DNA from: Laetmonice hystrix
Taxonomy: Eukaryota
NCBI GenBank assembly: GCA_965235115.1
Contig: OZ249445.1
Coordinates: 806,001 to 870,000 of the forward strand
Length of the DNA: 64,000 nt
Direction: 5' to 3'
Every line of letters begins with the position of its first letter. Within the stretch, counting starts at the first letter, position 1. The notes beneath the pieces were generated by a model, which was not told where the DNA came from, did not search any database, and worked only from the letters and a program-made list of their open reading frames with translations. A program made the position numbers and the translations under genes. Of the stretch, positions 940-63,484 are shown in pieces.

Positions 940-2397
940 GTCGTCTGCTGTGTCGGGGACCGAGTACTTGCTGTGACTGTGCACGTTTGTTATCAAACCG
1001 TCACGCTGTCGTCTGCTGGGAGTGCTGTGTCGGGGACCGAGTACTTGCTGTGACTGTGCACGTTTGTTATCAAACTGTCACACTGTCGTCTGCTGGGAGT
1101 GCTGTGTCGGGGACCGAGTACTTGCTGTGACTGTGCAGTTTGTTATCAAACCGTCACACTGTCGTCTGCTGGGAGTGCTGTGTCGGGGACCGAGTACTTG
1201 CTGTGACTGTGCACGTTTGTTATCAAACCGTCACACTGTCGTCTGCTGGGAGTGCTGTGTCGGGGACCGAGTACTTGCTGTGACTGTGCACGTTTGTTAT
1301 CAAACCGTCACACTGTCGTCTGCTGGGAGTGCTGTGTCGGGGACCGAGTACTTGCTGTGACTGTGCACGTTTGTTATCAAGCCGTCACACTGTCGTCTGC
1401 TGGGAGTGCTGTGTCGGGGACCGAGTACTTGCTGTGACTGTGCACGTTTGTTATCAAGCCGTCACACTGTCGTCTGCTGGGAGTGCTGTGTCGGGGACCG
1501 AGTACTTGCTGTGACTGTGCACGTTTGTTATCAGACTGCCACACTGTCGTCTGCTGGGAGTGCTGTGTCGGGGACCGAGTACTTGCTGTGACTGTGCACG
1601 TTTGTTATCAAACCGTCACACTGTCGTCTGCTGGGAGTGCTGTGTCGGGGACCGAGTACTTGCTGTGACTGTGCACGTTTGTTATCAAACCGTCACACTG
1701 TCGTCTGCTGGGAGTGCTGTGTCGGGGACCGAGTACTTGCTGTGACTGTGCACGTTTGTTATCAAACTGTCACACTGTCGTCTGCTGGGAGTGCTGTGTC
1801 GGGGACCGAGTACTTGCTGTGACTGTGCACGTTTGTGATCAAACCGTCACACTGTCGTCTGCTGGGAGTGCTGTGTCGGGGACCGAGTACTTGCTGTGAC
1901 TGTGCACGTTTGTTATCAAACCGTCACACTGTCGTCTGCTGGGAGTGCTGTGTCGGGGACCGAGTACTTGCTGTGACTGTGCACGTTTGTTATCAAACCG
2001 TCACACTGTCGTCTGCTGGGAGTGCTGTGTCGGGGACCGAGTACTTGCTGTGACTGTGCACGTTTGTTATCAAACCGTCACACTGTCGTCTGCTGGGAGT
2101 GCTGTGTCGGGGACCGAGTACTTGCTGTGACTGTGCACGTTTGTTATCAAACCGTCACACTGTCGTCTGCTGGGAGTGCTGTGTCGGGGACCGAGTACTT
2201 GCTGTGACTGTGCACGTTTGTTATCAAACCGTCACACTGTCGTCTGCTGGGAGTGCTGTGTCTGGGACCCAGTACTTGCTGTGACTGTGCACGTTTGTTA
2301 TCAAACCGTCACACTGTCGTCTGCTGGGAGTGCTGTGTCGGGGACCGAGTACTTGCTGTGACTGTGCACGTTTGTTATCAGACTGTCACACTCCCAG
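940..2397. repeat. 77-bp tandem minisatellite, ~19 copies
   Basis: Unit ctgtgtcggggaccgagtacttgctgtgactgtgcacgtttgttatcaaaccgtcacactgtcgtctgctgggagtg; starts at 948, 1025 ... 2333; generates the repeated 61-aa ORFs. Confidence 0.97.
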
Positions 2398-2636
2398 TTC
2401 CTGGTAGAGTAGTTCTGAGGTAGCTACACAGTGAAATCATGTTTCTTATTATTCTTAGTCAAGGATACCACATCTATAGAAGATGTTTTATTTAAGTATA
2501 CTTAAAGCCATTGTTGGTCAAATGTTGTGGACAGAGTGCTTATGTTGAGGCCACCAGACTAAATGTTTTGATATTTTTTTTTGTGAGCTGATGCAGTAAT
2601 AAAGACTGATTGATATAATGATATTGATGTTTACAG

Positions 2637-5600
2637 ATGACGATGCTGGCCCCGGTATTGACCAGGACGATGGTGACATCGTGTTTGTGAAGACGAGCCA
2701 GCTCCCTGTCAGCCCTATATGTATCAAGACAGACGATGAGGATGACGAGGAGGACATAATCTTTGTGTCTGTCACCAAACCTCGCATTCTGTCCGAGCCG
2801 GATACACCCACCTGGGACGTGGTCAAACCCAGACTCAACTCGCCGCTACCCGGACACGATGTGGCGGTCAAGGAGAGTCTGGACGGGTCACTGGACAGTA
2901 AAGATGGAGGTTTTAGAGTCCGGCAATCACAGGACGATACACACTCGAACAACTTGCCGATCGACATGACTGTAGGGGAGAGTAACAACAGTAAAACACA
3001 GCGGGCTGGGGGTAGTGTGTACGCTACGCTCCCGGACCACCCAGCCCCTAGTACCACAAAAGGTGGTGGGGGAACGGAAGACAATACGCTCCCAGACCTG
3101 CACCCAGCCCCTATTTCTATAAAAGGGGCCAGGGTGACGGAGGACAATACGCTCCCAGACCTACATCCGGCCCCTATTTCTATAAAAGGGGCCAAGGGGC
3201 CGGAGGACAATACACTTCCAGACCTGCATCCGGCCCCTATTTCTATAAAAGGGGCCAGGGTGACGGAGGACAATACGCTTCCAGACCTGCATCCGGCCCC
3301 TATTTCTATAAAAGGGGCCAGGGGGACAGAGGACAATACGCTCCCAGACCTACATCCGGCCTCCATGACTGTGTGTGATGATATCCTCAACACCAACAAA
3401 ACCCCAACTAGTATGCTTTGTGGCCAACAGGCGGATACAACCCGCTCACAGCTAGGGGGCAGCACCAACTCGGCAGGCGTGATAGGAGGAGAAAGAAACA
3501 GCACTGTCGAAGAGCTGCAAGCATTCCTCCCAGATCTTTTCATTGAGAACGATGGTGTTGCACGGGGCACAACATGGGATAGTGGTCAAGGTGCTGGGGG
3601 TCCGCTCCTGGCCTCCAGGGCGGTCGCTGGGACATCGACCTCGACGACGGTCAGTGCTACGAGCAGTGGTCAGTCTAATGCTATAGACTTAGCCAGGACT
3701 CCCAGAATGGTGCTTTCAGTCTCGGATATATTAAACAGTGGTAGTGGCACTGACGCGGTGTCCACAAGTGATAGGAGTACATTTATCACTTCCATATTCA
3801 GTGACGCACTGAATGCTACAGGTGTGACGGGAAGTCTTGGTGCCAATCGTGTCAGTGATAGCGGCACTGGTGACTCCAGCAATACTTCAGGTGTGATAAC
3901 GTTACCAACCTCATCATCTTCTACATCCTTCTCATCATCATCATCATCATCGTCATCATCAAGCACAGCATCTTCTCAGCCGCAGCCCTTGTCGTCAAGT
4001 TTCCCACTCGCCTGCTCCACCTCCCTGCCGAGTGACTTGGCTGGTGTCATCCCCCAGCCCCTCACATCTACGATAAGTCCCTGCGTCCTCCCACTACATC
4101 ATGTCTCTGCTGACCAGTCGTCACGGCCGAGCCTGCTGGTTGTTCCCACAGTTTCCTCTTCTTCCTGCCTTGGAACGTCGCTCAGCCCCACCCAGCAGTC
4201 GAGTGGACTCCCCTCACAAAGTCATGTCAGCTTCACTGCCGGTAATCCATCATTGGGTAGTCTGACCACTAAACCCCGCGTCGGATCCAGTCACAGTGTC
4301 CCGTCATCTCCAGTCGCTATAGTACAGCCAGTCTTCAAGCGTAGTGTTTCCTACATGCAATCCGATCCAAATCAAAACCATATTCCACTGAAGAAAAGAA
4401 AACGTTTACAACGGCGCACCGCAAAAACTGCCGGCGACTCAACCAACACAGCAGTCAGCCTCCAGACAGGAGGCAGTAAGTGTTCGTTTTGCCAGAATCT
4501 GGTGTGTTTCTCGAGGCTTTCACACTGCCTCCAGGGTCACGGCTGCTGCGGAGACTGCCTACAACAGAAGGTCAAGACCTTACTGTCCAAGGCCAAGCAG
4601 GTGCGTCTTACATTATGTAGACTTCACAGTTAGGGCTCCACAACCCTAACAAGGCAACTTTTTTCAGGGATCTTAATAATTATGTGTTTAAAGTGCATAA
4701 ATAATAGATGTATTTAGAAAGGAAATATGAGAGTGGGCTAATGAATATTTATGTCATGATTCAGTAATTTAATACAGTCTTGACCTACTTCAAATTTTAA
4801 GTCCTTTAACTACTCTGTTGAAATTGTGAATTGCCAAGTGTAGTGGTCGTTGTGGTCCTGTGTACAGTGTACGTGAACATTGCCTATAATATTCCAGGGC
4901 TCCTTGAAGTGTCCTCTCACGTCGTGCGCAAGCTACTTCCCAATGAGTAAGTATCCTGTTCAAAACAGGTTCCTCTAATTAACACACTCCTTCTATTAAC
5001 ACTCTTCCTTCCATACAGTGTTTGTGATTGGATGCCCTCAGTTGTTGCAATGTTTGTGATTGGATGCCCTCAGTTGTTGCAATGTTTGTGATTGGATGCC
5101 AGGTAGTTGTTAGAATGTTTGTGATTGGAAGCCAGCACTTGTTACAATGTTTGTGATTGGATGGCAGTTAGTTGTTACAATGTTTGTGATTGGATGCCAG
5201 GTAGTTGTTACAATGTTTGTGATTGGATGGCAGTTAGTTGTTAGAATGTTTGTGATTGGATGCCAGGTAGTTGTTACAATGTTTGTGATTGGATGCCAGG
5301 TAGTTGTTACAATGTTTGTGATTGGATGCCAGGTAGTTGTTACAATGTTTGTGATTGGATGCCAGTTAGTTGTTACAGTGTTTGTGATTGGATGCCCTCA
5401 GTTGTTACAATGTTTGTGATTGGATGCCCTCAGTTGTTACAATGTTTGTGATTGGATGCCCTCAGTTGTTACAATGTTTGTGATTGGATGCCAGGCAGTT
5501 GTTAGAATGTTTGTGATTGGATGCCAGTTAGTTGTTACAATGTTTGTGATTGGATGCCCTCAGTTGTTACAATGTTTGTGATTGGATGCCAGGCAGTTGT

Positions 5601-8600
5601 TGCAATGTTTGTGATTGGATGCCAGTTAGTTGTTAGAATGTTTGTGATTGGATGGCAGTTAGTTGTTAGAATGTTTGTGATTGGATGGCAGTTAGTTGTT
5701 AGAATGTTTGTGATTGGATGCCAGGCAGTTGTTACAATGTTTGTGATTGGATGGCAGTTAGTTGTTAGAATGTATGTGATTGGATGCCCTCAGTTGTTAG
5801 AATGTTTGTGATCGGATGCCAGGCAGTTGTTACAATGTTTGTGATTGGATGCCAGGCAGTTGTTAGAATGTTTGTGATTGGATGGCAGTTAGTTGTTAGA
5901 ATGTTTGTGATTGGAAGCCAGCACTTGTTACAATGATTATGACAATGTTTTTGATTGGATGCAGGCCAGCTCCAGCAGACCCTGCCTCCCATGGTGGTGG
6001 AGATCCTCGAGGAGAAGCTGGACCGTGAATACATTGACTACGCAGCTGACCTCGTCTGGCAGAACCTCGGCGAGTCGTCAGGTGGCCGAGGTGGTGAGGA
6101 TGAGGACGAGGATGATGTGGAGACAGACACTGAGACGGGAGAGGGCGGAGAGTCAGTGGCTGGTCTTAGTAAGGAGCCAAGCTTGGTGGCCTTGCCGTCA
6201 CACTGGGACCCCATGGACGACCCCTCGGTAAGGCCCTTCCTATCATGTTCACGGCAGACAAGCCAATGACAAGGCACTCTTTTAGGGAAAATCTTTATCA
6301 GGCTCGGCAGTATCTCAAATCAGGCAGGTTCACCGGACGGTTCGTGTGGGGTTCACATTGACTCTGTATTGGTGTGTGTTCACATTGACCATGTTCCATT
6401 GTCTGACTCTGTATTGGTGTGTGTTCACATTGACCATGTTCCATTGTCTGACTCTGTATTGGTGTGTGTTCACATTGACCATGTTCCATTGTCTGACTCT
6501 GTATTGGTGTGTGTGTGTTCACATTGACCATGTTCCATTGTCTGACTCTGTATTGGTGTGTGTTCACATTGACCATGTTCCATTGTCTGACTCTGTATTG
6601 GTGTGTGTTCACATTGACCATGTTCCATTGTCTGACTCTGTATTGGTGTGTGGGGGGTTCACATTGACCATGTTCCATTGTCTGACTCTGTATTGGTGTG
6701 TGTTCACATTGACCATGTTCCATTGTCTGACTCTGTATTGGTGTGTGTTCACATTGACCATGTTCCATTGTCTGACTCTGTATTGGTGTGTGTTCACATT
6801 GACCATGTTCCATTGTCTGACTCTGTATTGGTGTGTGTTCACATTGACCATGTTCCATTGTCTAACTCTGTATTGGTGTGTGTTCACATTGACCATGTTC
6901 CATTGTCTGACTCTGTATTGGTGTGTGTTCACACTGACCATGTTCCATTGTCTGACTCTGTATTGGTGTGTGTGTGTGTGTGGTGTGTGTTCACATTGAC
7001 CATGTTCCATTGTCTGACTCTGTATTGGTGTGTGTTCACATTGACCATGTTCCATTGTCTGACTCTGTATTGGTGTGTGTTCACATTGACCATGTTCCAT
7101 TGTCTGACTCTGTATTGGTGTGTGTTCACATTGACCATGTTCCATTGTCTGACTCTGTATTGGTGTGTGTTCACATTGACCATGTTCCATTGTCTGACTC
7201 TGTATTGGTGTGTGTTCACATTGACCATGTTCCATTGTCTGACTCTGTATTGGTGTGTGTTCACATTGACCATGTTTCATTGTCTGACTCTGTATTGGTG
7301 TGTGTTCACATTGACCATGTTCCATTGTCTGACTCTGTATTGGTGTGTGTTCACATTGACCATGTTTCATTGTCTGACTCTGTATTGGTGTGTGTTCACA
7401 TTGACCATGTTCCATTGTCTGACTCTGTATTGGTGTGTGTTCACATTGACCATGTTCCATTGTCTGACTCTGTGTTGGTGTGTGTTCACATTGACCATGT
7501 TCCATTGTCTGACTCTGTATTGGTGTGTGTTCACATTGACCATGTTCCATTGTCTGACTCTGTATTGGTGTGTGTTCACACAGGGTTTCAAGAAGGTGAC
7601 ACTCGTGGAAGGCAGTGTAGAGTATGAGGAGATATTTAACTCCTTTGACCTTTCCATGGGTTCCCGCTATAACAGAATTATCAGCATCAGTCGCATTCAA
7701 AACCCAATTCTCTGGCAATTCTACAGCATGTGAGTACTTTGTTTATTCTCAGATCCAACCTTTAGATAGTAAACAAAACTTGGCTCAAAGACAAAGTATT
7801 TGAACAAAAGAAAGAAGTTTAAGAAAAGAATAATTTTGACCCTGCTTAACGTGGGCAGCGGGGCTGTGTGTGTGTGGTGTTTAGTGCAGTGACTCAGACT
7901 TAAACAGACTGTTGTTTGGGGTCCGCAGGAGGCGGATGCAGATGGTTATGGAGAATGGTGGAGAAGCGGTACTGGAGAAACAACTTTGTCATGGGACGAG
8001 TAACAACGTTGTTGACGCCATCTGTAAATCTAACTTTGACTGGCGCCTGTGTGGAGCTCACGGGACTCTCTATGGACAAGGTAATATCTCAATGACAGGT
8101 GGGCTAAGGATGTCATGGTTGTTTCGGTAATTGTATAGACTCACATTGTTTATGTGATAATTTTGTTTGTGTTTACCTGTTTTGCCACCAAAGAGACTTG
8201 ATAAGGAGCTGCCTTGATGTGAATGTAGCTTTTGGTGAAGTTTGAGGTTGATGATTGTCAATTACCACACTTAATTAAGAAATCTGTATTTGTAATCATG
8301 TTCAGGGTCGTACTTTGCCCGTGATGCCGCGTACTCACACCTGTACACGGACAATGCTCGCAGCTACTCGCAGCAGGCCAGACTACGTCGGCAGACCCAG
8401 CAGATGTACCAGCTACGCCTTCAGTATGTCCAGGACTTTCACAATCAGCGGCAGAGACAGAGACATCAGCCGCTCACCGCTCTCCTACCCAAACCACCCC
8501 CGGCCCACCAGAAGGCTGCGCGGCCCTCATCCTCCTCCACCTCCGCCGCAGGCCAACTCGCAAACTCTCAGTCCCAGACTGCAGGCCTATTCACAACAGG

Positions 8601-8982
8601 TTCGCTGAAGTCAGCCCAACCAGTTCCTGTGGCCAGTACCAGTACGGGTTTGGTGGGTTCGGGACCCTCAAACAATCGACTCATGATGTTAGCAAGTCTT
8701 CTTGGTGGTGTATACAGTCAGAACTCCACAGACCTCACCGCTCAGAAGTTGAACTTTCATAGCATGTTCATTGCCAAGGTACTCGTCGGTCAGTACACAC
8801 ACGGCAAAACCCAGTACCGTAAACCGCCGCCGTTAGATGTCAACCAGCCGTTTGGCAGGTGCTATGATACTTGCGTTGACAACATCTGTGAACCAAAGAT
8901 ATTTGTGGTGTTTGACAGTGCTCAGAGCTATCCCGAGTACCTGATAGAATATACCACGGTCGTCTCTCAGTCCGGTGTATAG
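2637..8982 (+). CDS. SIM- and RING-containing PARP12/TIPARP-like mono-ADP-ribosyltransferase (5' end uncertain)
   Basis: Exons 2637-4600, 4898-4946, 5965-6227, 7584-7729, 7929-8080, 8306-8982, all GT-AG and phase-consistent. RING: CSFC-x11-C-x3-H-x2-C-x2-C-x18-CPLTSC, split over exons 1-2. PARP motifs: LPSHWDPM, RIQNPILWQFY, LCHGT, NFDWRLCGAHGTLYGQGSYFARDAAYSH, MFIAKVLVG, YDTCVDN, PKIFVVF, QSYPEYLIEY. The 2637 acceptor is phase 1, so an upstream exon is probably missing; an in-frame ATG at 2618 is the alternative. Confidence 0.88.
3074..3363 (+). repeat. Coding tandem repeat, 63 bp / 21 aa x5 (TEDNTLPDLHPAPISIKGARV)
   Basis: Directly visible in ORF 2618-4633, in frame, inside the disordered N-terminal region. 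Confidence 0.95.
5019..5962. repeat. 32/33-bp intronic minisatellite, ~28 copies, ending in the exon acceptor
   Basis: Unit tgtttgtgattggatgccaggtagttgttacaa with variants; the last degenerate copy supplies tttttgattggatgcag|5965. Confidence 0.95.
6344..7580. repeat. 45-bp intronic minisatellite, ~27 copies, abutting the acceptor at 7583
   Basis: Unit ctctgtattggtgtgtgttcacattgaccatgttccattgtctga; contains no AG on the sense strand. Confidence 0.97.
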
Positions 8983-9155
8983 GTAATACGTGTGTCGATA
9001 GGGTACAGGGTGGTAATGACAACAGGGACCCAACCCACCATAACCCGAGTACCTGATAGAATATACGACGGTCGTGTCTCAGTCCGGTGTATAGGTAATA
9101 CGTGTGTCGATAGGGTACAAGGTGGTAATGACAACAGGGACCCAACCCATCATAA
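8932..9155. repeat. 112-bp direct duplication spanning the PARP stop codon
   Basis: cccgagtacctgatagaata...caccataa at 8932 and again at 9044; the second copy repeats PEYLIEY-coding sequence in the 3' UTR. Confidence 0.9.
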
Positions 9156-10260
9156 CCAACATGATGTTCCCCGCTGCAATAACAGCTGTCGAGGCTTGAC
9201 CGATGTGCAAGTAACCACGAATTTTCTTTTGTTTTCTCATTAAGTTATTAAAATAGAATATCATCCATAGTCGTGCTGTTATTACTGCCAAACATTTGTA
9301 TACCAGTATGATGTATAACGAAGATGATGGTGAGAAATATCTTTGGTTTGTGGTGGATACGTGTGTTACATTGTGTCACCTACTGGCAGTTGTTTGGACG
9401 GTACGAGCATGGGGAGTCATGCAGGCCGTCAATGGTTACGTCGCTATGCACAGGTTATTGTGTTGAAGTATGTCAGTCTAAGCCAGCTGGCGGCTCGGAG
9501 AGGCTCATCGTGTAGTTAACGCTGTCGACATGTCTCAGAGAGACTTCAAACGTAAAATATACCATGTCTTAACTGGACTGAGGGATTCTACCGAGTGTTG
9601 ATGGTGCAAAAAGTCTGTTTGAGGCTTTCTTGTTGATTTTATGTAGTGTCCAGGTCGTTTGCTATCTATAGATTGCTTCATCTAATTTGTTAAACACAAG
9701 ATGTTGTACGAACTTATTTATTGCATAATGTTTCACATCTACACAATGCTCCGGACTTGTAGAGGTTTGAGGGGCAGTATATGATGTTGGTTTTCTTGAT
9801 AAAACTGGCAAAAAAAAAAGCTGGCAAAAAAACCAAAACCAAAAAAATTGTTATTGTGCTTTTAGTTTAGGCTTTAGTTGAATCTGGTAAAGCTGATGAT
9901 TTATAATTTTGAAAATCAATGAAAAAAGGATTGCTTACTGAGTAAATATATAGTGATTTTAAAATCCATTACCATATGGGATGGTATTTGAGTTGTTGTG
10001 AATGGTACGGTGGATAGAGGAGATGTATACCAATATTGTAATAGAGATATACATCTGTACATTAGACAGGGTTACGGTACGCAAGGAGAGAATGCAGGAA
10101 GAAAAACAAATGATGTCATATTATCTTTTGGTTAAAAATCGTAAACGTTGGCAAAGCTACAGGCCTCTTCAAATTCTACAACCCTTTAGATGTTCAACTT
10201 CCTTTCCAACCCAAGATGTCTGCAAGCTCTTGAACTTTGTGACGACGAGGAGCAATTTAC

Positions 10261-19400: not shown

Positions 19401-22400
19401 GCGCTTTGATACCTCCTCGCTACACGGAGCACCTCGCTTACGGCGCTTTGATACCTCCTCGCTACACGGAGCACCTCGCTTACGGCGCTTTGATACCTCC
19501 TCGCTACACGGAGCACCTCGCTTACGGCACTTTGATACCTCCTCGCTACACGGAGCACCTCGCGTACGGCACTTTGATGTGTCGTCAATTTGTACCTGCT
19601 GGGCGCGTCTTTAATATATAGCCACGCGTACTCGCTACATGATTCATGACGAACTATGCCAACACCACGCTGACCTCCAACCTGCAGCCCTACACACAGG
19701 GCCTGTACTTACCCTAGCAGGGGGTAGCAAGGGAGGGGGTGGTTATAAAATTAACCCATACCCAATCAACAGTATAGGGTAACCGCTCAAGCTGGAGTCC
19801 TAGTGCCTTCTGCAATCAGAAACGTTACGCAAGTTTTAACAAAGGTCTCTGAATGGTTTCAGCTGAGCGGCGGGGCCCTGCTCGGCGTGGGGATCTGGCT
19901 CCTCCAGGACCAATCCATCGTCCAACACCTGGAAGTGGTTGCCATAGAAACGAGTGACGCCGACCTACGGATGGCGACGTATATAATGATTGGGACTGGC
20001 GGCGTTATATTCCTCATCGGATTCTGTGGTTGTTGTGGCGCCTCCAGGGAGAGTCGGTGTCTGCTCGGGGTGGTGTGTACATGTACCCATTATAGGCTGA
20101 TAACATCAGATTTAACACGTTATGAATCAAGTATATAATTATGTAGGTCTATTCTATGTTTGAATGTTAAATTTGTAGACTTTCTTTAATATATATCCTG
20201 AAGGTATAGGCCTATTTCCTGCATGTGCTTTCAGAGTACAGAGGCTCATAGAGTGAGAGATAGAGTAACCACAAGGATTTGTAGGCCTCCATTTATTGTT
20301 GTGTTGTTCCAGTATGCCACGTTCATGGTTTTGATCATCACAGCCGAGGTCGGAGCTGCCGTCGTCGTCTTCTTCTTCATGAACAAGGTGGGCACACATC
20401 GCACCGCGTGTGTGCGAACTGGGGGGCACACATCGCACCGCGTGTGTGCGAACTGGGGGGGGGGCACACATCGCACCGCGTGTGTGCGAACTGGGGGGGG
20501 GGGGCACACATCGCACCGCGTGTGTGGGAACTGGGGGGCACACATCGCACCGCGTGTGTGGGAACTGGGGGGGGGGGGCAGGGGGCACACATCGCACCGC
20601 GTGTGTGGGAACTGAGGGGGGGGGGACAGGGGGCACACATCGCACCATGGGGATTGGTCTGTCGGACCATTGGTCGGTCGGACCATTAATTGGAATGTCG
20701 GACTAACGGTCCCTCCTCTTTTTGCCGACAGATAGAAACATTTTTTCACGAGTCGTTGAAGGATGAACTGCGCGACAACTACATGGCGAACACGACCCTA
20801 CAGCGGGCCTGGGACCGGCTACAAATACAGGTATAACATTCCGCCAGGGGGCGCCCTCGTACGGGTGCTCTCTGCCTGCGACTGCTGGGCGTCCGTCCGT
20901 CAGCGTGCCCCTGGCAACCCTTTCTCTGACGTCACGAACATCATAAGGAAAAAAGGAAGGAAAATAATTATGTTCGTGCATAGGTTAAGATCTGTAGAGA
21001 CATGATTTTAGTTACAATATTTATTAAAATAGAAAATTAAAATAACTGTAGGCTATCAAGTTTACCATTGTGTGTGGCTAGGACCTTAGGCTATATTTGG
21101 TCCTCGTGTATTCGAGATGCAGTGAGTTGTCGGTTTTAGTTAATATAATATACAGAATATAATATACAGATTATAATACACAGCTGTCAGACAATGATCA
21201 GGTATACCCGCCGCTTGCCCAGGTAGAGTCCCCCACTGGTGTTAGCAGGCTACCGTTCCACCATCGATTAATTATTGGCCTATAGTTGCCTGGAATATCG
21301 GCTTATATAGCCTACTGGCCACAGACGCTCCACACATTACCCATTGAACCCCCCCCCCCCCTCCGCCCCTCTGGTGATCACAGACGTACGCCCCCATATT
21401 AACCCTTTAACCCCTTCTCCATGATCCAGTTCACGTGCTGCGGAACGCGCGGTCCCTTCGAGTGGCGGGAGTCTGACTGGTTCCGGTCGGCGGAGGCCAG
21501 GGTGAGTGTTTCCTGTCTCAATTACAATGTAGGCTCTACTCTTTCAATGGGAAGGCATGACCCCCTCCCCCTCTGTGAATAAGTATGGCCTATGGCCCCG
21601 GATATAGACCTCTAGGAGGCCTATAGGGGCCTGTCCATGAGCTTCGACACTATAATATGATGGTGTCAGGAGCAGCAGGCCGGTCAGCCCTGGTTCCAAA
21701 CGGATAGCAGAACTCGTGGAAGTCTACATGGGTCGACTGTAAAGGGTAAATCCAAGGGGTAAGACCCCCCTTTTAAAATTTGTCCTTGCGTTGTTTTCAG
21801 CCGAGCGGCGTGCAGAAGTTGTACGCGCCGTGGTCGTGCTGCCGACGGGCGTCCCTGCTAGGGGGGCACGGGGACGTGTGTCAAGACGAGGCTAGGGGTA
21901 ATAGTACCCCCACCCAACACCTCCACGTCATGGTGGGTATCTAACTCATCATCTTTGCACAACTTCAACCGTCTAACTAAATGTCTGATGACCCCACGCA
22001 AACCGAAAAGCCCGGATAACACTGATGCCTGTCAATGGGCGCCAACCGCAGCCGCAGGTATATTGGTATTAAAGGGGCATATTATGAGGAAACGTTAAAA
22101 ATTGGTATTTCATAGAACTTTTGATGTTTTCATAAAGAGATCCTTCATTAAAATTGCTTAGTAAACAAAGACAGACTTATCAGTTTCATTTTGCGTGAGA
22201 AATCGAAGTTTATTAAGCTCCCTTGCCCGCTTCTCTGCCGATTTCGTAAAATATCTTTTGGGTGGCAATCTGATGCCGGGCGATCAAGTGCCACTGCTGA
22301 ATTGTTTACAACTAAGCAAAGCACGTGACTAAGCACATGCAGAGAGTGCACACACAGGATGTGACACAGTACGCGATTACACGGGTTGATGGGAGGTTGT

Positions 22401-25733: not shown

Positions 25734-34361
<8,628 letters not shown>

Positions 34362-39300: not shown

Positions 39301-42300
39301 CATCAGGTAGTCGTGCATTGAGGCAGTAACTTTTTCTCTGACTTTTTCAGATCTTTCAATGCACTTGGCTAAAAGTGTACAGGACTGTGAGAAAATCATG
39401 TCTCTGGGTTGGAAGAACCGATCAACAGGATCGACCCTGATGAATGCTGACTCCTCGCGGAGTCATTCCATTTTCACCATTCACCTGGAGCGGGCCGAGA
39501 CTGATGACGCAGGAGAGGAGCACATCAGGGCGGCCAAGTTAAATTTAGTAGATCTGGCCGGGAGTGAGCGTCAAGCCAAGACAGGTCAGTCATTTATGTC
39601 ACTCGCGCAGAGTTCCTGGAGCTGCCAATGGTCCGAGACTGCTGCATGCTCATACCTACTTCCAGTTTCTCTACTTCTCTCTATATGTCTCCTTCTCTCT
39701 GCATCTTTCTCTCTCTAATCCTGACGGTCTCTATACTTTCTATAGAGAATGTTTACAGAGAAATATGTTTCAGATAAAGACGACCTTGTTACAGAATGAT
39801 GTGGAGATCATGAGGTTTACTGTGACATTGGCTTTATGTTTGAATATTTTAGGAGCCACTGGTGATCGTTTAAAAGAAGCCACAAAGATCAACTTGTCAC
39901 TGTCGGCCCTGGGTAATGTTATCTCAGCTTTGGTTGATGGCAAGTCAAAGCACATTCCATACAGAGACTCCAAACTTACACGACTTTTACAAGATTCACT
40001 GGGAGGGAACACCAAGACGTTAATGGTGGCGTGTTTATCACCAGCCGACAATAATTATGATGAAACCTTGAGCACTCTTAGATATGCCAACCGCGCCAAG
40101 AACATCAAGAACAAACCCAAGATTAATGAGGACCCAAAAGATGCACTGTTAAGAGAATATCAGGAAGAGATCGCCCGTCTCAAAGCCATGCTCAAGGGCG
40201 AGATTCCCATCGATGTCGAAGGTGAGTTTTTGTTGTCAGTAAACTCGGGACTGTGTCAGGGTTGAAGCTCAGTCCTCGGACAGGTTTGGTTATTGTGTTA
40301 GTTTACTGCTTACCTCATGTGTTCTGTTGTGAATAGAATGCTACAAGTTGCTGAGATAACTGTAAAGATAAATCATATTGCTGATAGATGAAATCATCGA
40401 CTGGTTAGAAGTTGAGCAAACACACTCTGGCTGTAGTATATATATAAAAGTTCTGCTTGTCTCATGTAGAGATGGCTCGCCACATGGGTATGTATCGCAT
40501 TCAGTATGTCTCTGTAAGGTTACAGACACTCATCACATATCTTAGGAACCTCTCATACACAATCTCTTTTCAATTCTCGATTTTTAGTATTGTAATAGTT
40601 TGTCCACATCCTCTTCTCCATTGTTGCCGCAGCCTTCTCAACATTACAAGTTCAGTCATGAATGGGGGAACAGGGAGATTTATTTTCTATTGGTCACCTA
40701 CTTCATGCAGCCCTTAGATCACTTCCATAAATTTCGGACAAAAAAAAATCTGCCTATATCTCCACAGTTTTCAAAGTATTTTTGAAAGCCTTTCAAAATC
40801 TTACAGTTTCTGTATTGGATCTTTGGTACAATCATTGATAAAGAAAATTGCTATTTGTTTTAGATTAATTAAGTGTGATTGATTAATTTAAATTTGATGT
40901 TAAATTTGTGATGGTTGAATGATGGTTTCAGTACTACCAGGACATCTCAATAAATTGTTGAAGAAACAGATAGGTACTTGACGACGTTTATCAGTATTCA
41001 AACAATGTCATGACACGGTGAAAACAAAGTACTAGAACTGTAGATTACACATATTGTCACTCCATTATCATGCCATATATCAGTGGTATATCAGTCATAA
41101 TACACTGTAACGACTAGGGTATAATACATACTATCACAGTTAATGTGGACATTATACAAGTATATTTTTAACAGAAAAAGTGGCAATCCCTTGGCACTGC
41201 GGCACAGATAATGATAATATTGTCTTACTGTGACAGGTCATCGTTTGTACCAGATCCACGCTCTCAGTTGGTTCCTCTGTTATATCCTTGGTAGACCTTA
41301 ACCTATTGTAACAAATAGTGCAGCCTAGACTGTGTAACATACTACTTCATAGACAAGTTTATATCGTGACCAAACTAGAGTATATCAAAGTGATACAACC
41401 GTGCTTGAACTGCTGATAGCAGGATGTTGAGGACATAGGCAGGGGGGGGGGGATAATCTCAAATATTCTGTGATCTCGAATGGAATAAATTTGAATTTCT
41501 CTAGTCATGGTAAAGAGTCATGTGTACAAAAGTTCAATGTTAGAAGTTCATTCAAAGTACTAGTAGAGTAGTTACCATTGAACGTTTGCATCACTGCTCT
41601 TTGGAAACAGAAAATGATAAAAAAAACCCACATGAGATGAGAGAGGGTAATCTGACAATCTCTGTATTGACCGTGAACTATAGGTTTGTGATTACAAACG
41701 TATTCTACATTCTTGACTTGATGCTGATCTTATAATAGAGCAGTAACAGTCAGCTATAGTAGCGTATATGTGTAGTCTGTAGTGAATCCATGATCTTTCT
41801 CATTTACTCATAATCAAATAAGAAATAGCCAAGAAATAGCTTGTAGATTTATAACAATAAGATGGATATATGTACAGTCGGCTAGGAATACAGGTTTCTT
41901 GATATTATCTTTCCAGGACGATCACTTTGTAATTATGTCTATAGATCCAAGAAAGACTCGTTTCTCCAATGCTCAGGATTGTCCAAAAGAACTTTTTCTA
42001 TATCTTTCACGCTGATGAAACACTTTGTAATTCTTCTTTTTGAAGTGGGGGAAGAAAGTATATTTGACCTGAAATATGATAATGCTTTGAAGAAGGTGAA
42101 AAATACAAGGATGAAAAAACGTGATCAAAGTGAGTTTGGGATACTTAAGTAAATGTATGATTTTATTTGTGCCGAGACTAAAGAACTGATTGTGCTGCAG
42201 GTGCGGCAGGCGGGATTGGAGTTCCTGGGAGTGGAGCCTCTCCACACGTCGTAGAAAAGGTTGTCCATGTGGCAGACGAACAGACGCTGGAGCTTGAAAA

Positions 42301-60905: not shown

Positions 60906-61442
60906 GCGCCGCTACTTCAACCACACACTGCCGAGACGGATCACAACGATTGCTACTCAGCCCTGGGTTGTATTACATCGACTGCTGGCTCCGAGTGGTA
61001 TGACAGTACTTAGGCATACTATAGCAGGCCGATCTAGACTTCTATAACCGAGACCAGCCTACACTACACTCTACAGACTTGGCCCTGCAGCAGGCTATAT
61101 AGGCCTGGCCTACAGCGCTATTTCCTTTCGGACTTAAACAGGTAAGGATTTAAACGGGCGCCGACATTCCTACCGTTCCGTTGATAAAGATATCCATTGG
61201 TCCACAGAAAATAAATTTATGATGTTCAAAGGCTTTTATAGATAGGCCTATAGGCAGACACGCCCCCCCCCTCCAAGCACAAACACAGAATTTCAAGGCA
61301 GGCCTACGTTAATTATATGGCTACCTAGGCCTAGGCTTAGATCATCATATCTATGTTGTCCTAATTTGATGTGTGTTGATGTTACAGGGTGATGTTTTCC
61401 TCCAGTGACCTTACTCCGCTGCTGTCTGACGGACTGTGGAGG

Positions 61443-63484
61443 ATGCCCGCCCTGGAGCAGGCCGTCACTGACCCGTACTTGTGTCCACCACCCATCGTGC
61501 TGTCCCCCATACCGTCGTTTGACTGCTATCATATCCTCAGACGGATCCCCACAGAGCAGGTCACTCCTCCCGGCGGGTCGGGCCTGGACACGCCGCCCGT
61601 CACCTCCAGGGACTCGGCCGTCTTTGTCAACATGGTCATGGACCGGCTGGCAAGAGGGCTCACCGCCACCCTGGAGGACGCTGAGGTTGTGGTGGAAGAG
61701 GGTGGTGACCTGGGAGGTCAGACAGACAAGTCAGGAGTTTCACCCCTCGCTACCCCACCCGTCATCACCCGTCTGTCCACTGTGCCACTCTGCCTTCTCC
61801 CACCAGGCGGCGCTGCGGACGACCAAACCTCCGACCCGAGTGACGACTGTAGAGTCTCAATGGCGGCGTCCTACCTTAGCGCTGTGACCACTCAGGAAAC
61901 ACATTCCCTCGAGACGGGTTCCTTGTCAAGGTCATCGACCCTGACCCTGCCGGACGGTGACAGGCCATGTGACATGTCGGTTCCGTCGCTGTTGACAAGG
62001 GACGCCAGCGGTGACACGCTGTCCCCACCACATAACTTTGATCCAGCGGTGGTTAACCGGTGGAACGCTGCAGACTGCTCTCCTGCGGCGCCCGTTACAC
62101 ATGACGTCACACAAACAATGCCACTAAGTTTGGTTATACCTCGAAATAACTCTGAAAGGTCTACGCAAATCAGGAAAAAGCGTTCCAAGAAGAGCGTAGA
62201 TCGTGTGAGATTTAACACTTTGGTTAAAGTTAACACAGCGGGAAAGGCTGTACTTGCACCGAAAGTGTCGCCATCTACAGGAAAGAGGCGGCCTCTGACG
62301 TCACGAGTACCTGCAAACAGCGGGCAGACAACTGTGACGTCACGATCACCTGCAAACAGCGGGCGCACAACTGTGACGTCACGATCACCTGCAAACAGCC
62401 GGCGCACAACTGTGACGTCACAATCACCTGCAAACAGCCGGCGCACAACTGTGACGTCACAATCACCTGCAAACAGCAGGCAGACAAATGTGACGTCACG
62501 ATCCCCTGCAAACAGCGGGCAGACAACTGTGACGTCACGATCACCTGCAAACAGCGGGCAGACAACTGTGACGTCACGATCACCTGCAAACAGCGGCAGA
62601 CGGTCAAGTCGAAGTCGGCGCAGCACGGTAATCGTGAAAACATGGTCGCTGCGACCGAGGACAATGAGACAATGCAATCTTGTGGGAGAATCTAAATCAG
62701 AACAGGTAAGAGCAAATTTGTGTTCTCATTAGATTATGAGTAGACTCTAGCATGAAGTATTTAGTATGTTCAATCCTAGTTTAAGTTTCTTAAGGTGTCC
62801 CTGTACACGACGGTTGATAATTTCCGAATATATAAAATCTATATAGGCTACCCGTAAAATTAAAAGGTATAATCAAAGGAATTTTACGCTTTACAGAAAT
62901 CGAAGTCCATAAAAACGACTTTGCCAAGAGTACCCCGGGAGAGAATGAGCCCTGCACAGTTTACATTAGAGACCTGTCTACCGTGGACATCCTGGCAACT
63001 AGGGATTGCAGCCGAACCACCCAAAAAGGGCCGCGCCAATTGGTCAATGAGGCGTTCTGTAACCGGCGATTTTATTGGCTTCCACAACAATAAACTGTTT
63101 CGAGAAACGAGACAGAGGGGCTCAGCTATGTATGAAGTGGCAGTGCAGGATGCACGTAGTTGTAAGAAGAAAGTCGTCTACTACCACACAACGCTGGGCT
63201 CCGAGCTGGACCGGTCCTGGGATCTGGTTATCTTCAAAAACAAACCCCATGTCGTCAGGCAGGTGGATGACGTCATACGTCATGGCTGTAAGGTGTACGT
63301 TCGACGCGCCGTCCTCTCCGCCAATCAAATCGTGTGTAACATAGAGCGAAGGAAGACTGTGGTGCGGAGTCTGAGTGCACTGAGGACGCTCATTAAGAGA
63401 TCATACGATTACGCGTGGAACGAACGCCGGGAGGACCGTGTGAACATTCGTGGCGGGTTGACATTATCAAACGACACACTCTGA
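61443..63484 (+). CDS. Long disordered protein with a C-terminal ET/HRT-like (GIY-YIG-related) domain, ~616 aa
   Basis: Exon 61406-62705 (acceptor ttttcctccag, first in-frame ATG inside the exon at 61443, donor cag|gtaaga) joins in phase 0 to exon 62897-63484 (tttacag|AAA), fusing ORFs 61389-62732 and 62921-63484. C-terminal motifs SWQLGI, AMYEVAV, VVYYHT, DDVIRHGCKVYVRRA, YDYAWN; basic patch IRKKRSKK. Confidence 0.7.
62310..62597 (+). repeat. Coding 39-bp / 13-aa repeat x~7 (SPANSGQTTVTSR)
   Basis: In frame within the 447-aa ORF; each unit contains GTGACGTCAC. Confidence 0.93.

What the first reader, a model, noticed from the sequence alone, without database searches (positions are those of the whole stretch)
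2637..8982. Single polypeptide joining SUMO-interacting motifs, an RBR-type RING1 and a mono-ART PARP domain
Seen: N-terminal acidic-flanked hydrophobic motifs (DDGDIVFV, DDEDDEEDIIFVSV), an NLS-like PLKKRKR, a complete C3HC4 RING followed by YFPMSQLQQTLPPMVV, an acidic linker and a PARP domain with an H-Y-I triad (HGT, SYF, PKIFV). Knowledge: SIM plus RING defines SUMO-targeted ubiquitin ligases (RNF4/RNF111); the RING and trailing helix resemble RNF216 RING1 as I recall it; H-Y-I marks mono-ADP-ribosylating PARP7/11/12, which normally carry WWE and/or CCCH domains not seen here. No IBR or RING2 follows. Inference: a self-contained SUMO-reading ubiquitin/ADP-ribose writer, hard-wiring crosstalk that vertebrates achieve with separate proteins (e.g. 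DTX3L-PARP9), possibly in innate immunity or nuclear bodies.
Basis: partly seen in the sequence, partly recalled or inferred. Interest (0 to 1): 0.72.

Follow-up and report, generated by a model that had tools for sequence, protein, structure and literature searches.

The report
Orphan RNF216-type RING1 fused to PARP
This invertebrate gene is a real member of a protein family shared by molluscs and annelids. It joins the front half of the ubiquitin ligase RNF216 (SUMO-binding motifs plus its first zinc finger, but not the catalytic part) to a PARP12-like enzyme that adds single ADP-ribose tags. As far as I could find, this combination has not been described.

Summary
Six + strand exons with canonical GT-AG splice sites (2618-8982) give a 1089-aa protein. 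It has three acid-flanked SIM-like motifs, about 550 aa of disorder, a basic NLS-like patch and a C3HC4 zinc finger. A helix, an acidic linker and an H-Y-I PARP domain follow. The gene is not a one-off: at least 20 full-length relatives in bivalves, gastropods, a chiton and an annelid share the architecture. Two uninterrupted cDNA-like contigs also carry it.

In sequence and predicted fold, the zinc finger matches only RNF216 RING1 plus the RING1-IBR helix. There is no IBR or RING2. The PARP domain is closest to PARP12. It lacks WWE and CCCH modules and carries a family-wide disordered insert of 115-440 aa.

RNF216 itself has N-terminal SIMs, so "SIM + RING" is inherited from RNF216 and is not a new STUbL. 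All members keep the RBR-type C-x4-C second zinc loop, and the usual hydrophobic E2 contact is not conserved. Autonomous E3 activity is therefore doubtful.

Best reading: a nuclear, SUMO-directed mono-ADP-ribosyltransferase with an orphan RING1 docking module. Pfam sees only PARP in these proteins, and I found no paper on the fusion. This species has no RNA data.

The parts
2618..4600 (+). Exon 1 (aa 1-661): SIM cluster, long disordered Ser/Thr-rich region, NLS-like patch, and the first six zinc ligands of RING1. Donor is AAGCAG|gtgcgt.
   Evidence: The intron position inside the RING is the same as in a relative's genomic fragment (P0152 ends at the aligned residue).
2621..2767 (+). Three SIM-like motifs (ILMF-TDDD, DDGD-IVFV, DDEDDEED-IIFV).
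   Evidence: One search gives the coordinates. All three are conserved as acid-flanked hydrophobic quartets in 16 of 18 aligned N-termini (A5).
3069..3361 (+). 63-bp coding tandem repeat (4.7 copies; 21-aa unit TEDNTLPDLHPAPISIKGAR) in the disordered region. It is specific to this lineage.
   Evidence: absent from relatives.
4385..4405 (+). Basic NLS-like patch PLKKRKR.
   Evidence: A similar LPPKKQ(K/R)R patch precedes the RING in many relatives (A3).
4481..4927 (+). RNF216-type RING1 zinc finger (C622, C625, C637, H641, C644, C647, C666, C671), split by intron 1. The second zinc loop is C-x4-C.
   Evidence: All eight ligands are invariant in 17 relatives. RNF216 is the only significant PDB match. 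Fold search top hit is 8eb0_A RNF216.
4898..4946 (+). Exon 2 (last two zinc ligands, YFPM).
   Evidence: ccag|GGCTCC ... CAATGA|gtaagt.
5965..6227 (+). Exon 3: conserved LPxMVVEILEEKL helix (counterpart of the RNF216 RING1-IBR helix), acidic linker, and the start of the PARP domain (PSHWDPM).
   Evidence: model helix 78-108.
7584..7729 (+). Exon 4: PARP N-terminal helices (RIQNPILW).
7929..8080 (+). Exon 5: LCHGT (H835 at 7990-7992) and the donor-loop region.
   Evidence: Pfam PARP E 2e-5 on this exon alone.
8306..8982 (+). Exon 6: GSYFA (Y867 at 8311-8313), disordered insert, C-terminal half of the PARP fold with I1063 (8899-8901), stop at 8980-8982.
8353..8763 (+). 137-aa low-complexity insert in the loop between YSHLYTD and MFIAKVLVG. 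It is not an intron.
   Evidence: Every full-length relative has an insert of 115-440 aa at the same point, including the cDNA-like contigs. It is predicted disordered (pLDDT below 50) inside an otherwise confident PARP fold.

Best explanation
This is an intact orthologue of a conserved family found in molluscs and annelids. An ancient fusion put the N-terminal half of an RNF216-like RBR ligase in front of a PARP12-like H-Y-I catalytic domain. The RNF216 half comprises a triple SIM cluster, a disordered region, a basic patch, RING1 and the RING1-IBR helix.

Shown here: the gene model, the family, the RNF216 and PARP12 affinities, the absence of IBR, RING2, WWE and CCCH, and the conservation of the zinc ligands, H-Y-I/V and the NAD-site motifs.

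Inferred: the protein is nuclear. The SIM cluster takes it to poly-SUMOylated proteins, and the PARP domain mono-ADP-ribosylates them or itself. The orphan RING1 plus helix acts as a docking or regulatory module for an E2~Ub, ubiquitin or another partner. It is not an autonomous ubiquitin ligase, because it keeps the RBR-type wedge loop and has no catalytic RING2.
For: - Gene model with six canonical splice pairs.
- End-to-end alignment to relatives at 32-40% identity.
- At least 20 cluster representatives share RING1 + PARP + insert. They come from bivalves, gastropods, a chiton and an annelid.
- Uninterrupted ORFs of 995 and 1015 aa lie on 3.2- and 3.4-kb Logan contigs. The same protein is split into fragments on ENA genomic contigs.
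- The RING profile matches RNF216 at E 4e-9, and every other PDB chain is at 0.04 or worse. The AF2 model (pLDDT 81) has 8eb0_A RNF216 as top Foldseek hit, followed by other RBR RING1s.
- Eight zinc ligands and the LP..VV.IL helix are invariant or nearly so.
- The PARP profile matches PARP12 at E 9e-61, ahead of PARP15, PARP14, PARP10 and ZAP. The model covers the whole PARP12/15 fold with TM 0.88-0.91 by target.
- HGT, GxGxYFA and [IV] at the third triad site are present in all RING1-bearing members; the divergent outlier P0104 departs.
- SIMs appear in published RNF216 domain maps.
- The C-x4-C loop II is present in the window and all 20 RING1-bearing relatives checked; only the divergent outlier P0104 departs. 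Canonical RINGs are invariably C-x2-C, and the extension blocks closed E2~Ub (PMC5462532).
- Full RNF216-like RBR genes exist separately in this genome.
Against: - No transcript data exist for this species, so exon joining here rests on splice signals and homology.
- SIM function, nuclear localisation and ART activity are all motif-level inference with no biochemistry.
- The hydrophobic E2-contact residue between C1 and C2 is not conserved (F, N, K, T, D, Q and others). Even E2 docking is therefore uncertain.
- Strong conservation of the zinc scaffold shows that it matters but does not say for what.
- The role of the conserved insert is unexplained.
Confidence: 0.6

Rival explanations
1. One reading: a dual writer. 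RING1 has reverted to a canonical RING E3, so the protein both ubiquitinates and mono-ADP-ribosylates SUMOylated targets. This would make it a true STUbL with an added ART.
For: The complete C3HC4 scaffold is invariant across the family. The SIM cluster plus RING resembles RNF4 and RNF111. RNF4 appears among the weak sub-threshold RING matches (E 0.04).
Against: The C-x4-C Zn-loop II is retained in all RING1-bearing members checked, whereas canonical RINGs are invariably C-x2-C and the extension disfavours closed E2~Ub. The hydrophobic E2-contact position is not conserved. The only significant homologue is an RBR RING1.
Confidence: 0.15
2. A coupled Ub-ADP-ribose enzyme. RING1 holds an open E2~Ub next to the ART site. 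Ubiquitin is then either ADP-ribosylated or esterified onto ADP-ribose, a single-chain analogue of DTX3L-PARP9 or DTX-type chemistry.
For: An E2~Ub-binding-type RING1 and an apparently active ART sit in one conserved chain, separated by a short acidic linker. This rests on general knowledge of DTX3L/PARP9 and was not tested here.
Against: No DTC-like domain is present. The E2-contact residue is not conserved. There is no direct evidence.
Confidence: 0.1
3. RING1 is purely structural or autoregulatory. It could be an intramolecular lid, a dimerisation element, or a partner for canonical RNF216-like ligases. In that case the protein is simply a SUMO-targeted or otherwise scaffolded MART.
For: The most conserved surface is the helix after the RING rather than the E2 face. 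This genome carries many RNF216-like RBR genes.
Against: Nothing tested here argues against it. It overlaps with the best explanation.
Confidence: 0.12
4. Artefact: two neighbouring genes, or a decaying copy, read as one.
For: No RNA is available for this species. Long minisatellites fill introns 2 and 3.
Against: The frame is intact and the splice sites are canonical. The same order of parts occurs in at least 20 species and on uninterrupted cDNA-like contigs. All catalytic and zinc residues are kept.
Confidence: 0.03

Closest known systems
RNF216 (TRIAD3), an RBR E3 ligase
   Same: N-terminal SIMs, a long disordered region, and RING1 with identical ligand spacing: C-x2-C-x11-C-x3-H-x2-C-x2-C-x18-C-x4-C. 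The FPxSxLxxxLP strand and the start of the RING1-IBR helix also match. RNF216 is the only significant sequence match in the PDB and the top fold match.
   Different: IBR and RING2, with the catalytic Cys, are absent. The IBR cysteines are already lost within exon 3. A PARP domain takes their place. RNF216 residues that contact UbcH7 (C517, Y519) have no conserved counterparts.
PARP12 and the PARP7/11/12/13 mono-ART subgroup
   Same: The catalytic domain is closest to PARP12 (E 9e-61). It has an H-Y-I triad, PxxWxxM, RIQN, GxGxYFA and a YPEYLIxY tail. Vertebrate PARP12/ZAP are the nearest proteins outside the family.
   Different: There are no WWE or CCCH fingers. A disordered insert of 115-440 aa sits in the loop after the YSHxYTD helix. 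The N-terminus is RNF216-derived.
SUMO-targeted ubiquitin ligases RNF4 and RNF111
   Same: Clustered acid-flanked SIMs lie upstream of a RING-fold zinc finger.
   Different: The RING is an RBR RING1 with a C-x4-C loop II, not a canonical dimeric RING. Matches to RNF4 are non-significant (E at or above 0.04). The likely catalytic output is ADP-ribose, not ubiquitin.
DTX3L-PARP9, RNF146-tankyrase, and U-box or UBC-PARP fusions of Dictyostelium and fungi
   Same: All link ubiquitin machinery with ADP-ribosylation. Fusions of PARPs with ubiquitin-pathway domains are on record (PMC4245714).
   Different: Those use DTC/RING, WWE-RING, U-box or UBCc modules, or separate polypeptides. None uses an orphan RBR RING1 or SIMs.

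Membership tests
RBR (RING-between-RING) E3 ligases | RING1 with RBR-type features (RING fold, extended Zn-loop II) | tested here: met
   C-x4-C is present in the window and in all 20 RING1-bearing relatives checked. Fold hits are RNF216, ARIH1/2 and Parkin RING1.
RBR (RING-between-RING) E3 ligases | IBR domain | tested here: not met
   An RBR profile built from this genome's own RNF216-like genes finds nothing in six frames of the window. Relatives run from the helix straight into a linker and PARP.
RBR (RING-between-RING) E3 ligases | RING2 with catalytic cysteine | tested here: not met
RNF216 family | Specific sequence similarity of RING1 and the following segment | tested here: met
   Profile against the PDB: RNF216 at E 4e-9, all others at 0.04 or worse.
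RNF216 family | N-terminal SIMs | tested here: inconclusive
   Three conserved SIM-consensus motifs are present, and RNF216 maps show SIMs. Direct homology of the motifs was not aligned, and binding was not tested.
Mono-ADP-ribosylating PARPs (H-Y-Phi) | Complete ART fold with H, Y and a hydrophobic third residue in place of Glu | tested here: met
   H835, Y867 and I1063. I or V in all RING1-bearing members. Fold TM 0.88-0.91 to PARP12/15.
PARP7/11/12/13 subfamily | WWE domain before the catalytic domain | tested here: not met
   Pfam finds only PARP in five full-length members. No WWE hit on this contig.
PARP7/11/12/13 subfamily | CCCH zinc fingers (PARP7/12/13) | tested here: not met
STUbL (RNF4/RNF111 type) | Canonical RING able to activate E2~Ub (C-x2-C loop II, linchpin) | tested here: not met
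   Loop II is C-x4-C throughout. Criterion taken from PMC5462532. Activity itself cannot be tested here.
STUbL (RNF4/RNF111 type) | Poly-SUMO binding by clustered SIMs | not testable with these tools
   Motif-level match only.

The most novel reading that the evidence does not exclude
The orphan RING1 is a working E2~Ub holder placed beside an active ART. On this reading the family performs chemistry not seen in a single chain: SUMO-directed formation of ubiquitin-ADP-ribose hybrid marks, or ADP-ribosylation of the E2-bound ubiquitin. The conserved disordered insert would act as the auto-modification or condensate-forming arm.
Probability: 0.1. Interest if true: 0.85.

Novelty: new variant of a known kind. 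Interest (0 to 1): 0.55.

Why it matters
RBR RING1 domains are thought to work only together with RING2. Here a RING1 has stayed under strong constraint, without RING2, across molluscs and annelids, welded to a mono-ART. That makes it a natural experiment on what a RING1 can do alone.

The protein also places SUMO reading, a ubiquitin-pathway module and ADP-ribose writing in one chain. This bears on current work on Ub/ADP-ribose crosstalk (DTX3L-PARP9, PARP14, RNF146).

In practical terms, Pfam sees only "PARP" in these proteins, and databases call them uncharacterized, "PARP7S" or even "ZAP". The RNF216-derived half is therefore invisible to architecture searches. PARP12 and RNF216 both act in vertebrate innate immune signalling, so an immune role in lophotrochozoans is a reasonable hypothesis to test.

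Tried and rejected
- The word-indexed protein search with the exon 1 RING region found nothing. With a relative's RING region it found only one more member. That index is too coarse for this short domain.
- Pfam on single exons gives only sub-threshold PARP hits and no RING.
- No RNA run exists for the organism. The three DNA holders are probably the source sample and would add nothing.
- The idea that the 137-aa stretch in exon 6 is an unspliced in-frame intron is rejected. All relatives, including the cDNA-like contigs, carry an insert there.
- The idea that upstream exons add WWE is rejected for this contig.
- The AFDB cluster search with the RING model returned generic RING and RBR entries and gave no taxonomic extension.
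- The PARP-core tree, rooted on PARP12, places the window with the annelid and other non-mollusc rows, but support is weak and one branch is long. I draw no donor or order-of-events claim from it.
- Complex prediction was not run. No E2 or SUMO sequence was at hand as an unaltered reference, and I make no firm binding claim.
- 'PARP7S' in GenBank and one paper is an automatic orthology label, not a description.
Full report
OBSERVATION. Joining them at consensus splice sites gives one open frame of 3270 nt (1089 aa plus stop). The exons are 2618-4600, 4898-4946, 5965-6227, 7584-7729, 7929-8080 and 8306-8982. Every intron starts with gt(a/g)(a/c)g(t/g) and ends in cag. The zinc ligands are C622, C625, C637, H641, C644 and C647 in exon 1, and C666 and C671 in exon 2. 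The triad is H835, Y867 and I1063. Pfam on single exons gives only sub-threshold PARP hits on exons 5 and 6 and no RING.

THE GENOME AND RNA. The window is contig 11:806001-870000 of a 627-Mb, 35-contig assembly. Earlier notes of the scan describe it as an invertebrate. No RNA run holds the stretch. The only three holders are DNA-like runs of one sample. Transcript proof in this species is therefore not available.

IT IS A CONSERVED FAMILY.
- A full HMMER search with the last exon returned full-length proteins of 925-1189 aa. They show the same order of parts: a SIM cluster at the very N-terminus, a long Ser/Thr-rich disordered region, a basic LPPKKQ(K/R)R patch, the zinc finger, the LPxMVVEILE helix, a linker and a PARP domain.
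- The window protein aligns with them from the N-terminus to the stop codon, at 32-40% identity over the RING-to-PARP part.
- A profile of the RING region finds it in 17 further cluster representatives among the hits and in the window protein (E 1e-30). Two more members came from a later search.
- Named sources are bivalves (Pinctada, Mya, Mactra, Mizuhopecten, Potamilus, Ostrea, Solemya), gastropods (Patella, Haliotis, Gigantopelta, Bulinus, Biomphalaria, Lymnaea, Bradybaena), a chiton (Liolophura) and annelids (Owenia, plus a Helobdella fragment).
- All are called uncharacterized, hypothetical, 'Poly [ADP-ribose] polymerase', 'PARP7S' (an automatic orthology label) or, once, 'Zinc finger CCCH-type antiviral'.
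- Two members lie as uninterrupted ORFs on contigs of 3205 and 3380 nt with short flanks. The same protein appears as separate fragments on megabase genomic contigs. One of those fragments ends at the residue aligned with the window's exon 1 end, inside the RING. This is what a spliced mRNA and a conserved intron look like, and it argues that RING and PARP are on one transcript in relatives. I could not read the library type of these runs.

THE ZINC FINGER IS RNF216 RING1.
- In a 17-sequence alignment all eight ligands are invariant. K45, L72 and L76-P77 are invariant too, and the following VV.I positions are nearly so.
- A profile search of all PDB sequences finds RNF216 (7m4m, 8eb0) at E 4e-9. 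Nothing else is better than 0.04 (with five sequences the values were E 1e-6 against 0.02). The match runs through RING1, the FPxSELxxxLP strand and the start of the RING1-IBR helix.
- An AlphaFold2 model of this segment (pLDDT 81, and 90-96 over the finger) has RNF216 8eb0_A as its best Foldseek hit (E 5e-4, rmsd 2.1 A over 81 columns). Other RBR RING1s follow: ARIH1, ARIH2 and Parkin.
- The helix continues for about 30 residues and then the chain becomes an acidic, poorly conserved linker. The positions where RNF216 has the first IBR cysteines are non-cysteine within the same exon.
- A profile of complete RNF216-like RBR genes from this same genome finds no IBR or RING2 in any frame of the 64-kb window. 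Those genes are several intronless ORFs on contig 29, and one matches RNF216 over the whole RBR at E 3e-73. Canonical RNF216-like ligases and the RING1-PARP gene therefore coexist.

THE SIM CLUSTER COMES WITH RNF216. Published domain maps of human RNF216 show SIMs N-terminal to the RBR (PMC9834252 Fig. 1a legend; PMC13153464). In the family, three acid-flanked hydrophobic quartets within the first 50-60 residues are conserved in 16 of 18 sequences. 'SIM + RING' is thus best read as the retained N-terminal half of an RNF216-like ancestor, not as an independent STUbL invention. SUMO binding itself is inferred from the motif only.

THE PARP DOMAIN.
- The family profile matches PARP12 best (E 9e-61), then PARP15, PARP14, PARP10 and ZAP.
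- Outside the family, the nearest database proteins are vertebrate PARP12/ZAP with WWE and CCCH domains. They cover only the PARP half of the query.
- Full-length family members have no Pfam domain other than PARP, and no WWE match lies on this contig.
- HGT, GxGxYFA and I (V in three species) at the third triad position are kept in every RING1-bearing member. This is the mono-ART pattern.
- Between the YSHxYTD helix and the MFxA(R/K)VLVG strand, full-length members carry a low-complexity insert of 115-440 aa, 137 aa here; the one exception is the partial Lymnaea entry P0015, with about 17 aa. In the model the insert is disordered (pLDDT below 50), while the rest superposes on the whole PARP12/PARP15 catalytic fold with TM 0.88-0.91 by target.
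- The insert is therefore a family feature, not an unspliced intron.

WHAT THE RING1 PROBABLY DOES NOT DO. Canonical RINGs invariably have C-x2-C as their last ligand pair and often a linchpin residue. RBR RING1s have up to C-x4-C, and this extension acts as a wedge that keeps E2~Ub open and unreactive towards lysine (PMC5462532; PMC9834252). The window and every RING1-bearing relative checked have C-x4-C; the only departure is the divergent P0104. With no RING2 cysteine to receive ubiquitin, autonomous ligase activity is unlikely. In addition, the residue between the first two cysteines is a hydrophobic E2 contact in RINGs and corresponds to RNF216 C517. In this family it is F, N, K, T, D, Q, Y, L, V or G, so even E2 docking is uncertain. 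The best-conserved surface is the strand and helix after the finger. In RNF216 that part forms part of the allosteric ubiquitin site.

MECHANISM (inferred). I read the protein as a nuclear, SUMO-directed mono-ADP-ribosyltransferase. The SIM cluster and basic patch target it, the PARP12-like domain writes the mark, and the orphan RING1-helix is a docking or regulatory module. Rivals are:
- a true dual Ub/ADP-ribose writer;
- a coupled Ub-ADP-ribose enzyme;
- a purely structural RING1.
Only biochemistry can separate these.

NOVELTY. Fusions of PARPs with ubiquitin-pathway domains are known: U-box in Dictyostelium, UBCc in fungi, UIM in PARP10 (PMC4245714). I found no paper describing an RNF216-type RING1 or SIMs on a PARP. 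Pfam-based architectures hide the RING. The sequences themselves are public. I class this as a new variant of a known kind, of moderate interest.

LIMITS.
- The 5' end is not fixed.
- There is no RNA evidence for this species.
- The taxonomic range beyond molluscs and annelids was not probed exhaustively. Only the best 150 and 120 hits were seen, and one divergent unnamed member, P0104, has a C-x2-C last pair.
- The PARP tree is weakly resolved.

Noticed in passing
window 5014-5964: The 33-bp minisatellite of intron 2 (about 28 copies) repeats the 3' splice-site context of exon 3. The unit reads AATGTTTGTGATTGGATGCCAG|G, and the real acceptor reads AATGTTTTTGATTGGATGCAG|GCC. The intron therefore holds roughly two dozen acceptor-like decoys upstream of the used site.
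   Followed up: partly
window 6359-7583: The 45-bp minisatellite of intron 3 (about 27 copies) runs to 3 nt before exon 4. Its last unit, changed from TTCACATTG to TTCACACAG, supplies the acceptor.
   Followed up: partly
window 8932-9157: A 112-bp tandem duplication (96% identical) copies the last 17 codons, the stop codon and the first 3' UTR bases of the gene.
   Followed up: no
window 946-2392: A 77-bp minisatellite (18.8 copies, 98% identical) lies directly upstream of exon 1, where a promoter or 5' exon would be expected.
   Followed up: no
G000 contig 29 (L006-L013, L015): At least nine intronless RNF216-like ORFs with complete RING1-IBR-RING2 sit on one contig. Four of them have the same 595-aa open frame, and some have an extra N-terminal RING. 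This looks like a lineage-specific expansion of RNF216-type ligases.
   Followed up: partly
P0265, P0001 and P0005: A lungfish 'MIB2-like' protein of 1112 aa carries a PARP domain, which would be an independent E3-PARP fusion. One unnamed 709-aa protein has three tandem PARP catalytic domains and another has two.
   Followed up: no
window 19800-64000: Other genes in the window are a tetraspanin-like exon (19803-20138), a PSMD2-like exon on the minus strand (32493-32828), KIF17 motor exons (36197 onwards, 39359-40265), and a Ser/Thr-rich ORF with an 11-aa repeat (61389-62732).
   Followed up: no
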